NCBI GenBank assembly: GCA_965603825.1 | Contig: CBFDEM010000016.1 | Location: forward strand, 463,695-527,694 | From: Blepharisma stoltei ATCC 30299 | Lineage: Eukaryota > Protista > Ciliophora | DNA length: 64,000 bases | Direction: 5' to 3' | In this document: piece by piece, positions 52,748 to 64,000 of the stretch | Layout: every line of letters begins with the position of its first letter | Position numbering within the stretch: position 1 is the stretch's first letter | Notes under the pieces: generated by a model | What the model was told of the DNA's origin: nothing | Seen by the model: only the letters and a program-made list of their open reading frames with translations | Database searches by the model: none | Program-made: the position numbers and the translations under genes

Positions 52748-52852
52748 TTTTTGTTATGACAGTTAGAGTTAAGAATAAATGTTAAAATGCTTAATAAGAA
52801 AAATTAGCTGGTCATTTATTATTTATTTCTAATTTCCATCATCATATAATTA

Positions 52853-53960
52853 ATGGGCAAAACTAATAGAACAAAGCACGTAAAAGTATCCCACAAAGAC
52901 ACAGTCTTAAAGCGCAAAATTGAAGAGCCCAAGGAAAAAATCAAAGACCCTGAAGATCTGATTGATGCTGAAGGCTTTATTTGTCTTCCAGCTTCAGAAG
53001 AAGTCCCTGAAGAGGTAGAGAATGAGCTTCAAGCATTCAGAGCCAATCGAGTCACATTTAACACAGAACTCAGCGAGAAGCTTAAAGACACAAGTTCTTT
53101 GGACCCAAAGATAAAAGACGTCTATTCTAAGGTTGGGAAAATTCTTCGAGGATATCGAAGTGGAAAGCTTCCAAATGCTTTCAAAATAATCCCAGGGCTT
53201 GAAAAGTGGATGGAAATCCTCGAACTTACCAGTCCAGACGACTGGAGCCCACAAGCTGTATATCAAGCCACCAAAATTTTTGTATCAAGTATGGGTCCTA
53301 AGCAGTCACAAAAATTTTTATACAGAACCCTTTATAATGCGGCTAAAAAAGACATTCAGAAACACAAAAAATTAAACTACCATCATTATTTAGCCTTGAA
53401 AAAGGCTTTTTATAAGCCTGCGGCTTGAATAAGAGGAATTCTGTTTCCCCTTTGTGAAGAAGACTGTACTCTAAAAGAAGCAACTATAATAGGATCAGTG
53501 ATTTCAAAGGTATGTGCATGACATTAAGGTGGTGCTTTTCTTGGCATTCTCCATTTCACCCGTGCTACATTACGTGCCGGATGATAAAAAATCCAGCGAA
53601 CAGTTATTAACTATTTAGGTATCAATTCCCATGCTTCATGCTGGGGCTGCTCTTATAAAACTTTCAGACATGGAATGTACAGGCCCAGTCATACATTTCA
53701 TCAAAGTTTTACTACAAAAAAGATACGCATTGCCTGGAAGAGTCCTTGCTAGTGTGTGTAAATTTTTCTATAAGCTTATTATGGATGACCGAAGGATGCC
53801 TGTTATGTGGCATCAAGCCTTGCTAACCCTTGCTCAATATTATGGCAAAGAAATTGAGCCTGAGTTAAAAGACGAAATCCGGGAATTGATAAAAATCCAT
53901 AACCACCCACAGATTACTCCTGAAATCAGAAAGTATCTGTTTAATGAAGGGAGAGAGTAA
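52853..53960 (+). CDS. BYSL: Bystin/Enp1 (40S biogenesis factor), with a 109-nt intron at 53510-53618
   Basis: YRSGKLPNAFKIIP, KKLNYHHYLALKKAFYKPAA; splicing gives CTLKEATIIGSVISK|VSIPMLH; KRYALP, PVMWHQALL, ITPEIR. Confidence 0.95.
53510..53618 (+). other. 109-nt spliceosomal intron
   Basis: gtatgt...actatttag, phase 0, with A six nt from the 3' end as in the tiny introns; exact removal restores the conserved bystin sequence. Confidence 0.92.
53516..53605 (+). ncRNA. Candidate intronic box H/ACA snoRNA (18S rRNA pseudouridylation guide)
   Basis: Hairpin with pocket (ACAUUAA / AUUUCACC), H box ACAUUA at 53567-53572 14 nt from the pocket top, a small second hairpin, and ACA at 53600-53602 plus 3 nt. 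Confidence 0.78.
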
Positions 53961-54001
53961 TGAGTTAATAAGTAATACACAATATTTTTATGCAATAAAT
54001 A

Positions 54002-55111
54002 TTAATACAAAGGGTCATCAGATAAAGCCTGCTCTATTCGTTTGGAGATGGAATTAAGCTGATAGTCAAGCTTCATGTAGCGCTTTACTAAGCCATCCTG
54101 ATGGAAATACTGACCAAGAGCGCTTTGTCGGCCTTTAGAAGAAATGTTGATTTTTGGCTCAAAACTCAAATGACTGAAGCTTTGCTGCTCGATTTTTTCG
54201 ACTTTTGACTCGACTTGGGATTTCCACTTCATATTTCTCATATAGACGCCTAAGCTTTTTAATGGGCTTTTTGCTTTGGAATGGACTTTTGGTCGGAATG
54301 TGCACCCTTCTAGCTCTTTCATGTGCTTTTTTATAGCATTTTCTTCATTTTTTAGCAGGGCTTGCTCTTTTCATTTCAGCTGTCTTGTGTAGATATCCTC
54401 ATCTTGATAGTTGTCGAAGTTTATTTTATCGTTTAATATAGGGTAAAATGAGCAGTCTTTCATCTCAGCGTCTTCATTTTCTTTTTTCTTTTCGTTTCAT
54501 TTATTCTGTGCATTTAATTTCCACTTAACTGCTCTCTCACACAATGGCTCATTTGTATCATATTTTTCTATGACTGCAGGCTCAGTGATTTTTTGGTCCA
54601 TTTTTCGTTTAAAGTCATTCTGAATATCTTTTGAAAAGCTTACATTACTGGAGGATACTTGGTTTAATGAAATTTGTCTCAAATGAATTGAGGAAACAGA
54701 AGTGTTAGCTTCTTGATTTTTGTTAGAAATAGCTAATGATTGATTTGAAAAATCCCGCCGAGGCGTAGATGGTGTTGAACTAAATTTCTTTTCAGGAGTT
54801 TTTTTAGATGATTTTTGTATAGAGTTTACTGAGGATCGTCTGGAAAACGCTTTTTTCGGTGTTTCTGGAGCTGAATGATTAGATGCGTTAACTATAAAAG
54901 AGTTAGAGGTTTTGCTGCTTTGCATTTTAGCCTTTTGGGGTGATTTTTTTACTCTAAGTGCTGCTTTTATTTGTTCTCTGCGGGTAGCAAATGCTGATTC
55001 AGCGTCTTGTTCAGACATTTGACTATACTGCCTAGAATCGCTAGAAATGCTCTCATTTTCAATTGATAAAGGTGAGTTTTCAGGCAAATCGTAAATGTTT
55101 TTATTTGCCAT
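54002..55111 (-). CDS. Hypothetical protein with CxFxP repeats (DCSFYP, GCTFRP, LSFEP)
   Basis: ORFs are co-frame across TGA 54497 and a second TGA near 54371; ends in TAA. Confidence 0.8.
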
Positions 55112-61672: not shown

Positions 61673-62395
61673 TCTAATGTTGTTTTTTATATTTTAATAG
61701 ATTTTTTTAAGTTATTGGAATTCGCAAAATAATTTTGGGAATTTATCGTCTATGTTATTCAGTAAGAAATTAAAATATATAAATTGAAGATCAATCCTAC
61801 AAATGGCATACTCTGTGCGAAAATAAATTACTTAAAATTTTATTTAAAAATTAACACAAAATTGAAGTAAAATTACTTTTATAAATTTAATTATTAGAAT
61901 GAAATTTAATTGAATTAATTACTGTATTGCTATTTTCGGAATGATAATCCCTAGCAATTTTTTTTGGAACGTGAAGGTCTGTAAAGTTCAGCCAAGAAAA
62001 TGACAAGTGCCGCCGATCAGAAAATAGTGCTGCGCTATAGAGATTTCTTTATGATAGTCGCCCTTTATATATATAAAATAATTTTTTAATATTAAACTAA
62101 TTTTGCTCTCATGGATATTAGGTTTTTCTCTAGCAATTCAATTTTTTGCTAGCATTATGTCTGCTCATGTAGGGAAGGGTTAGGTTCTCTAGAATTGTAT
62201 GCACGATAAGATTAAAAAGCTGTAATACCCGTAGCTATAAACAGAAATAATTTAAATTTTATAGGAAAGAAGCTAAAGTGCACCAATGTGCAGTATATTA
62301 TTAGGTTTTTATTTTCTTTAAATAAATTTATAAAGCATGACTTGATATAAGAATTTTATTTAATTCAAAGATATATATTTAAATTATTTAAAAAT

Positions 62396-64000
62396 TTAGG
62401 GTGTTAGGGTGTTAGGGTGTTAGGGTGTTAGGGTGTAGGGTGTTAGGGTGTTAGGGTGTTAGGGTGTTAGGGTGTTAGGGTGTTAGGGTGTTAGGGTGTT
62501 AGGGTGTTAGGGTGTTAGGGTGTTAGGGTGTTAGGGTGTTAGGGTGTTAGGGTGTTAGGGTGTTAGGGTGTTAGGGTGTTAGGGTGTTAGGGTGTTAGGG
62601 TGTTAGGGGTTAGGGTGTTAGGGTGTTAGGGTGTTAGGGTGTTAGGGTGTTAGGGTGTTAGGGTGTTAGGGTGTTAGGGTGTTAGGGTGTTAGGGTGTTA
62701 GGGTGTTAGGGTGTTAGGGTGTTAGGGTGTTAGGGTGTTAGGGTGTTAGGGTGTTAGGGTGTTAGGGTGTTAGGGTGTTAGGGTGTTAGGGTGTTAGGGT
62801 GTTAGGGTGTTAGGGTGTTAGGGTGTTAGGGTGTTAGGGTGTTAGGGTGTTAGGGTGTTAGGGTGTTAGGGTGTTAGGGTGTTAGGGTGTTAGGGTGTAG
62901 GGTGTTAGGGTGTTAGGGTGTTAGGGTGTTAGGGTGTTAGGGTGTTAGGGTGTTAGGGTGTTAGGGTGTTAGGGTGTTAGGGTGTTAGGGTGTTAGGGTG
63001 TTAGGGTGTTAGGGTGTTAGGGGTGTTAGGGTTAGGGTGTTAGGGTGTTAGGGTGTTAGGGTGTTAGGGTGTTAGGGTGTTAGGGTGTTAGGGTGTTAGG
63101 GTGTTAGGGTGTTAGGGTGTTAGGGTGTTAGGGTGTTAGGGTGTTAGGGGTGTTAGGGTGTTAGGGTGTTAGGGTGTTAGGGTGTTAGGGTGTTAGGGTG
63201 TTAGGGTGTTAGGGTGTTAGGGTGTTAGGGTGTTAGGGTGTTAGGGTGTTAGGGTGTTAGGGTGTTAGGGTGTTAGGGTGTTAGGGTGTTAGGGTGTTAG
63301 GGTGTTAGGGTGTTAGGGTGTTAGGGTGTTAGGGTGTTAGGGTGTTAGGGTGTTAGGGTGTTAGGGTGTTAGGGTGTTAGGGTGTTAGGGTGTTAGGGTG
63401 TTAGGGTGTTAGGGTGTTAGGGTGTTAGGGTGTTAGGGTGTTAGGGTGTTAGGGTGTTAGGGTGTTAGGGTGTTAGGGTGTTAGGGTGTTAGGGTGTTAG
63501 GGTGTTAGGGTGTTAGGGTGTTAGGGTGTTAGGGTGTTAGGGTGTTAGGGTGTTAGGGTGTTAGGGTGTTAGGGTGTTAGGGTGTTAGGGTTAGGGTGTT
63601 AGGGTGTTAGGGTGTTAGGGTGTTAGGGTGTTAGGGTGTTAGGGTGTTAGGGTGTTAGGGTGTTAGGGTGTTAGGGTGTTAGGGTGTTAGGGTGTTAGGG
63701 TTAGGGTGTTAGGGTGTTAGGGTGTTAGGGTGTTAGGGTGTTAGGGTGTTAGGGTGTTAGGGTGTTAGGGTGTTAGGGTGTTAGGGTGTTAGGGTGTTAG
63801 GGTGTTAGGGTGTTAGGGTGTTAGGGTGTTAGGGTGTTAGGGTGTTAGGGTGTTAGGGTGTTAGGGTGTTAGGGTGTTAGGGTTAGGTGTTAGGGTGTAG
63901 GGTGTTAGGGTGTTAGGGTGTTAGGGTGTTAGGGTGTTAGGGTGTTTAGGGTGTTAGGGTGTTAGGGTGTTTAGGGTTGTTAGGGTGTTAGGGTGGTTAG
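62396..64000 (+). repeat. Telomere, (TTAGGGTG)n = (CCCTAACA)n, about 200 units
   Basis: A continuous 8-mer array runs to the window end, with the G-rich strand oriented 5'->3' towards the end. Confidence 0.98.

What the first reader, a model, noticed from the sequence alone, without database searches (positions are those of the whole stretch)
53510..53618. Exceptional 109-nt intron in a tiny-intron genome hosts a compact H/ACA snoRNA predicted to target 18S rRNA
Seen in sequence: every other intron found here is 15 nt, but bystin needs exact removal of 53510-53618 (GT..AG, A at -6) to restore SVISK|VSIPMLH. The intron is GC-richer than local non-coding DNA. It folds as lower stem GCAUG(53516-20)/CGUGC(53561-65), pocket ACAUUAA(53521-27)/AUUUCACC(53553-60), imperfect upper stem GGUGGUGC/GCAUUCUCC, H box ACAUUA (ANANNA, 53567-72) exactly 14 nt from the pocket top, a miniature second hairpin (GGAU/AUCC core) and ACA+3 nt (53600-05). 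Established: H/ACA pockets sit 14-16 nt from the box, and ribosome-biogenesis genes often host snoRNAs. The conserved SSU rRNA stretch GGUGAAAU-U-C-UUGG pairs 8/8 with the 3' pocket strand and 4 bp (two G-U) with the 5' strand. From memory, the human equivalent site is guided by SNORA14/ACA14 (needs verifying). Inference: a spliceosome tuned to 15-16-nt introns still excises a 7-fold longer intron kept to release a ~90-nt snoRNA with a vestigial 3' hairpin. Gene predictors limited to tiny introns would miss both the intron and the RNA.
Basis: partly seen in the sequence, partly recalled or inferred. Interest (0 to 1): 0.92.

Follow-up and report, generated by a model that had tools for sequence, protein, structure and literature searches.

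The report
Long intron carrying a compact snoRNA
In a ciliate whose introns are nearly all 15-16 letters long, one ribosome-assembly gene keeps a real, conserved 109-letter intron that almost certainly carries a shrunken guide RNA for modifying ribosomal RNA, showing that this splicing machine can handle long introns.

Summary
The finding holds. Window 53510-53618 is a spliceosomal intron in the bystin gene of (by inference) Blepharisma stoltei. The exact 109-nt skip appears in RNA-type contigs of this and a related organism; two related DNA runs are continuous, so it is not an IES. A 103-115-nt intron sits at the same codon in three other heterotrich loci. All keep the lower stem, the pocket strand AUUUCACC, a box 14 nt away, a small second hairpin and ACA+3, while the upper stem changes sequence but still pairs. 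Stentor-clade genes lack the intron; one lineage has a 15-nt intron there. The predicted target is SSU U865, the site vertebrate SNORA14 guides (psi966). Two corrections: this rRNA reads UAUGA after the target, not UUGG, and the guide strand matches that; and the best U2-pairing branch A is at -9, not -6. The mature RNA and the pseudouridine are not shown. Paramecium has a precedent (~80-nt snoRNA introns), so this is a new variant, not a new kind. The scan noted another H/ACA-like RNA with a miniature second hairpin elsewhere in this genome (s1-629759, not tested).

The parts
52853..53509 (+). bystin (Enp1) exon 1, 219 codons, one UGA read as Trp
   Evidence: Pfam PF05291 E=2e-45 on the part before the UGA; alignment with heterotrich homologs
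53510..53618 (+). 109-nt phase-0 spliceosomal intron, GT..AG
   Evidence: exact skip in RNA-type contigs X8 and X15, absent from X13 and X18; orthologous introns of 109, 103 and 115 nt
53510..53515 (+). strong 5' splice site GUAUGU (G at +5 in all long orthologs)
   Evidence: sequence; U1 5' end ACUUACCUG in this genome
53516..53605 (+). predicted 90-nt H/ACA snoRNA (ends inferred)
   Evidence: conservation and folding in four lineages; single copy in the genome
53516..53520 (+). lower stem 5' arm (pairs with 53561-53565)
   Evidence: paired in all three rows counted, one U-G to C-G change; same in L028
53521..53527 (+). 5' pocket strand ACAUUAA; pairs with SSU UAUG (867-870) with one bulged U; UUCAUAA in two other lineages pairs 5/5
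53528..53552 (+). upper stem-loop of the guide hairpin; sequence differs between lineages, pairing kept
53553..53560 (+). 3' pocket strand AUUUCACC; 8/8 Watson-Crick to SSU 857-864, the only such site in SSU, 5.8S region and LSU
   Evidence: invariant in all orthologs; target scan
53567..53572 (+). H box ACAUUA (ANANNA), 14 nt from the pocket; AUAGCA, ACAGCA, ACAGCG in relatives
53575..53598 (+). miniature 3' hairpin with no conserved pocket
   Evidence: stem kept with one two-sided change, loop not conserved
53600..53605 (+). ACA box plus 3 nt (ACAGUU)
   Evidence: invariant in all orthologs
53605..53611 (+). canonical-type branch site UAUUAAC, predicted branch A at 53610 (-9); overlaps the last nucleotide of the snoRNA
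   Evidence: 6/6 pairing to GUAGUA of this genome's U2; changes in relatives mostly keep pairing
53612..53618 (+). 3' end UAUUUAG, same as the tiny-intron consensus end, with A at -6
   Evidence: sequence; consensus in PMC13685798
53619..53960 (+). bystin exon 2, 113 codons plus stop
   Evidence: Pfam PF05291 E=1e-34

Best explanation
The bystin pre-mRNA is a host transcript. The major spliceosome removes a 109-nt intron (shown), recognising it by strong sequence signals: GUAUGU at the donor and a fully U2-complementary branch site at -9 (inferred). The lariat is debranched and trimmed to a ~90-nt H/ACA RNA protected by dyskerin-complex proteins (inferred). Its 5' hairpin guides pseudouridylation of SSU rRNA U865, the equivalent of human psi966 (predicted). 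The shrunken 3' hairpin guides nothing and serves as the docking and end-protection site for the ACA box (inferred). The intron is about as short as an RNA plus splice signals can be: 6 nt before the RNA, 13 nt after. Selection for the guide keeps this intron long.
For: Exact splice junction in two RNA-type runs. Long intron at the same codon in L005, L007-L010/L035 and L028/L031-L034, three well-separated branches of the bystin tree. Intron identity 82/67/64% against 45/39/34% at third codon positions of exon 2. Pocket-to-box distance 14 nt in all. Unique 8/8 rRNA match, about 0.02 expected by chance, and U865 is the top site for the L005 and L007 pockets. The 5' strand differs from the SNORA14 consensus (UCCAA versus UCAUA) in the way this rRNA requires. 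SNORA14's 3' hairpin targets 18S-966 in all vertebrates (PMC6984369). Dyskerin and DBR1 genes present. No snRNA-type promoter element upstream.
Against: No direct evidence of the mature RNA or of the modification. In this species the 5' strand needs a bulge, and a simple scan without bulges ranks SSU U1506 (6+5 pairs, three of them G-U) above U865. Formal covariation on three sequences is not significant (190/500 shuffles). The fold alone is not unusually stable. Box 1 is ACAGCG in L028/L034, not strict ANANNA. The branch point is predicted only. No DNA run of this same species was laid.
Confidence: 0.85

Rival explanations
1. The stable product is a single-hairpin guide of about 57 nt that ends three nucleotides after the first box (ACA-UUA, 53572), as in trypanosome or Euglena H/ACA-like RNAs; the small hairpin and ACAGUU are a splicing element that shortens the effective donor-to-branch distance.
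For: Box 1 starts ACA or AUA in every ortholog and its sixth A is missing in L028/L034. The hairpin aligns with the terminal, ACA-bearing hairpin of SNORA14.
Against: A second invariant ACA follows a conserved stem and lies 3 nt before the branch motif, the usual H/ACA end. ANANNA holds in most orthologs. No single-stem H/ACA RNA was seen in Tetrahymena (PMC3273799).
Confidence: 0.08
2. The intron is a cis-regulatory structure only: it folds to control splicing or retention of bystin mRNA, and no snoRNA is made.
For: Intron-containing contigs exist beside spliced ones in both RNA-type runs; all long versions are 3n+1, so retention breaks the frame.
Against: Does not explain the invariant, unique 8-nt rRNA complement, the second strand matching UAUGA, the 14-nt spacing or the terminal ACA.
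Confidence: 0.05
3. The segment is a retained IES (germline DNA), bounded by the 6-nt repeat AGGTAT.
For: The joint is ambiguous over 6 letters that contain TA.
Against: Seven DNA-type runs of this organism hold 99-100% of the sampled words; X13 and X18 cross it in one piece and only RNA-type runs show the skip; the repeat is not kept in L028; the segment is conserved in distant relatives.
Confidence: 0.01

Closest known systems
snoRNA-hosting ~80-nt introns of Paramecium tetraurelia (Chen et al. 2009, as cited in PMC5485702)
   Same: A ciliate with tiny introns keeps a handful of much longer introns that contain snoRNAs.
   Different: Typical introns there are 20-30 nt, about 3-fold shorter than the hosts; here the gap is about 7-fold, in a lineage where longer introns were put down to mis-assembly or mis-prediction (PMC9942806 SI). 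The Chen paper itself was not available, so its snoRNA types and hosts were not checked.
Vertebrate SNORA14/ACA14 (Rfam RF00397)
   Same: Same predicted SSU site; the AUUUCA strand, the lower stem pattern and the following ACA align with SNORA14's 3' hairpin.
   Different: Score 14.6 bits against a cut-off of 36; here the guide hairpin is the 5' one, the RNA is 84-97 nt rather than about 135, and the 5' strand reads CAUA/CAUUA. Homology or convergence on the same target cannot be told apart.
Canonical two-hairpin H/ACA snoRNAs of Tetrahymena (TtnuHACA, 124-136 nt; PMC3273799)
   Same: Hairpin, H box, hairpin, ACA+3 layout; occasional intronic location.
   Different: The second hairpin is cut to about 22-32 nt with no pocket.
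Single-hairpin H/ACA-like guides of trypanosomes, Euglena and archaea
   Same: One functional pocket per RNA; small size.
   Different: A second stem and a second box are kept and conserved.
Heterotrich 15-16-nt introns (Stentor, Blepharisma, Fabrea)
   Same: GT..AG, same UAUWUAG 3' end; L006 has such an intron at this very codon.
   Different: Seven times longer, G at +5, and a branch site that pairs fully with U2.

Membership tests
U2-type spliceosomal intron | GT..AG segment removed from RNA but not from DNA | tested here: met
   (RNA status of X8 is a guess by the tool, but its contigs start and end at the gene's ends; X15's type is not on record)
U2-type spliceosomal intron | branch site complementary to U2 | tested here: met
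   6/6 at -9 against this genome's U2; actual use not testable
box H/ACA snoRNA | H box ANANNA after the first hairpin | tested here: met
   ACAUUA, AUAGCA, ACAGCA; ACAGCG in L028/L034 deviates
box H/ACA snoRNA | ACA three nucleotides from the 3' end | tested here: inconclusive
   ACAGUU invariant after the second stem; the real 3' end is not mapped
box H/ACA snoRNA | bipartite pocket complementary to a target around U-N, 14-16 nt from the box | tested here: met
   8+4 pairs (one bulge) here, 8+4 in L005, 8+5 in L007 and L028; 14 nt in all. Relatives were tested against this genome's rRNA, not their own.
box H/ACA snoRNA | two full-size hairpins, about 120-140 nt | tested here: not met
   84-97 nt; 3' hairpin without a pocket. 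This is the variant feature.
box H/ACA snoRNA | stable RNA bound by dyskerin, Nop10, Nhp2, Gar1 and directing pseudouridylation | not testable with these tools
   only the dyskerin gene was checked and found
SNORA14 (RF00397) | score at or above the Rfam gathering cut-off | tested here: not met
   14.6 versus 36 bits, E about 2; not recovered in the genome-wide search
SNORA14 (RF00397) | guides the 18S psi966-equivalent uridine | tested here: inconclusive
   predicted site is the homologous motif; modification not shown
Blepharisma IES | absent from most somatic DNA, TA-bounded | tested here: not met
   present in DNA assemblies, skipped only in RNA-type contigs

The most novel reading that the evidence does not exclude
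Heterotrichs run two modes on one spliceosome: length-defined 15-nt introns and rare sequence-defined long introns with a canonical branch site. Their H/ACA guides use a lineage-wide 'one-and-a-half-hairpin' format, intermediate between two-hairpin and single-hairpin guides. Because the ACA tail overlaps the branch helix (and in L028 the first stem overlaps the donor site), snoRNP assembly competes with splicing and tunes bystin output by feedback.
Probability: 0.25. Interest if true: 0.85.

Novelty: new variant of a known kind. Interest (0 to 1): 0.63.

Why it matters
How a spliceosome excises 15-nt introns, and whether it has lost the ability to handle longer ones, is an open question: published work attributes longer heterotrich introns to assembly or prediction errors and calls Blepharisma introns largely parasitic (PMC9942806 SI). 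This is a natural, conserved, spliced counter-example with an identifiable function. It gives a ready substrate for testing length- versus sequence-based recognition, and three natural states at one codon (long, 15 nt, none). It also offers a minimal eukaryotic H/ACA RNA for asking what the second hairpin is needed for, and warns that tiny-intron gene models will split such host genes.

Tried and rejected
IES: rejected. Rfam at the locus: nothing near a cut-off; only the weak SNORA14 alignment was informative. Own promoter: the snRNA-type upstream element found at U1, U2 and U3 has no match within 500 nt upstream of the intron. Other long snoRNA introns in this genome: three donor/branch/acceptor pattern scans were at or below their controls; ten hand-picked hits gave nothing in Rfam; a C/D-box scan gave 37 hits against 7 controls, but most lie in open frames and none had a convincing guide. 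These scans are narrow and do not show that the bystin intron is unique. Paralogs of the RNA: none. Relocated copy near intronless bystin genes (Stentor locus +/-2 kb, two other loci +/-10 kb): none. One search used a mis-indexed structure and is void (redone). Chen et al. 2009 and Slabodnick et al. 2017 were not held; the Tetrahymena target tables were not held.

Full report
Setting. The genome is 41.5 Mb in 64 contigs, reads UGA as Trp in this gene and has TGTTAGGG telomere repeats at the window's end. These match the Blepharisma stoltei ATCC 30299 somatic genome (PMC9942806); the identification is an inference. Its supplement reports 97% of introns at 15-16 nt, says most ab initio predicted introns over 16 nt were wrong, notes that other lengths in Stentor were put down to mis-assembly, calls the introns largely parasitic, and never mentions snoRNAs.

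The intron is real. Both exons match Pfam Bystin in consecutive profile parts, and homologs read straight across the junction. Laying public contigs on 52800-54050 shows an exact 109-nt GT..AG skip in X8 (this organism, RNA by the tool's guess; its contigs begin and end at the gene's ends) and X15 (a relative, type not on record). X13 (DNA) and X18 cross the region in one piece. Seven DNA-type runs of this organism hold 99-100% of the sampled words. The IES reading is therefore rejected, although I did not lay a same-species DNA run. Contigs that contain the intron are also present in X8 and X15 (depths 31 versus 68 and 53 versus 85); contig depth cannot measure retention, so this is only a hint.

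It is conserved. Exon-by-exon protein searches led to other bystin loci, placed among heterotrichs by their grouping with the Stentor gene. A long intron lies at the same codon in L005 (109 nt), L007-L010 and L035 (103 nt) and L028 and L031-L034 (115 nt). These form three well-supported branches about as far from each other as from Stentor; the Blepharisma-Stentor split is dated near 400 Ma (PMC13685798). The species behind these loci are not known; L007-L010 may be Fabrea-like, which I did not test. Stentor coeruleus and its clade have no intron there, and L006 has an ordinary 15-nt one. The tree is unresolved at its base, so one gain with later losses is plausible but not shown. Intron identity to the window is 82, 67 and 64%, against 45, 39 and 34% at third codon positions of exon 2. 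None of the 39 listed differences (of 41) in X13 falls in the intron.

What is conserved looks like an H/ACA RNA. The lower stem, the pocket strand AUUUCACC, a box 14 nt from the pocket, a short second stem and ACAGUU are kept in all lineages, while the upper stem changes sequence and still pairs. Limits: the window sequence alone folds no better than shuffles, formal covariation on three rows is not significant, and pocket-plus-box patterns are common by chance. The case rests on the joint conservation.

Target. This genome's SSU has GGUGAAAU once, at 857-864, followed by U865, C and UAUGA. The 3' pocket strand pairs 8/8. The 5' strand is UCAUA in two lineages (5/5), CAUA in L005 (4/4) and CAUUA here (4 pairs, one bulged U). 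The Rfam SNORA14 consensus has AUUUCA and UCCAA in its 3' hairpin, which aligns weakly with this hairpin (14.6 bits, cut-off 36), and that hairpin targets 18S-966 in all vertebrates (PMC6984369). So the guide strand differs from SNORA14's in the way this rRNA requires. A bulge-free scan ranks U1506 first for the window's own pocket, but with three G-U pairs and not for the relatives. I file the RNA as an H/ACA variant that works like SNORA14's 3' domain, not as a member of RF00397.

The second hairpin. It is about 22-32 nt, its loop is not conserved and it has no pocket. Tetrahymena H/ACA RNAs are 124-136 nt with two pocket-bearing stems and no single-stem form was seen (PMC3273799). In yeast the second hairpin raises activity (PMC8096250), which gives a reason to keep a stub; that step is inference. 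An unchecked scan note (s1-629759) describes another 98-nt H/ACA-like RNA with a miniature second hairpin in this genome; I could not locate it.

Splice signals. The donor is GUAUGU (GUAAGC in L028), with G at +5, where the tiny-intron consensus has A or U. The 3' end matches the tiny-intron end with A at -6, but UAUUAAC just upstream puts an A at -9 that pairs 6/6 with this genome's U2 sequence GUAGUA, against 3/6 for -6. Relatives keep this through wobble changes (5/6 in L028, at -10). I infer that the long intron is recognised by sequence. The RNA's last nucleotide is the first of the branch helix, and only 6 nt precede the RNA (4 in L028), so the intron is minimal and snoRNP binding could compete with U2; this is a hypothesis. 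Dyskerin and DBR1 genes are present. The upstream element seen before U1, U2 and U3 genes is absent here, which favours release from the intron.

Extent. The RNA is single-copy. Narrow pattern scans found no second long snoRNA intron, which is weak evidence only.

Comparison and verdict. Intronic snoRNAs are known in ciliates (PMC3177221; PMC3273799), and Paramecium's few ~80-nt introns hold snoRNAs (PMC5485702). In the papers I could search I found no report of this for heterotrichs. Shown: the intron, its splicing and its deep conservation. Predicted: the RNA's ends, the target and the branch point. New variant of a known kind; interest 0.63. Method note: the spliced model was searched exon by exon by reference and the joined step was left out.

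Noticed in passing
L113, L121 (U2), L115 (U1), L081 and L082 (U3), position about 1501 on the gene strand: A shared upstream element GTCCC(A/T)TAACAA lies about 55-60 nt before two U2 genes, one U1 gene and two U3 genes: the probable snRNA-type promoter element of this genome.
   Followed up: partly
L006 860-874: A 15-nt intron sits at the same bystin codon as the long one and starts GTAAGC like the L028 long intron; it may be what remains after loss of the snoRNA, or the site before its gain.
   Followed up: partly
L037 1648-1662, minus strand: The dyskerin gene has an ordinary 15-nt intron with A at position 10.
   Followed up: no
L108, L109, L110 (contig C11, 63541, 71401, 75735): Three similar stretches begin with the same upstream-element-like motif; no Rfam match; nature unknown.
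   Followed up: no
window about 62000-64000: Long telomeric repeat tract (TGTTAGGG)n with a few irregular units.
   Followed up: no
orthologous introns in L005, L007, L028: All long versions are 3n+1 in length (103, 109, 115), so retention always shifts the frame; only three distinct lengths, so this could be chance.
   Followed up: partly
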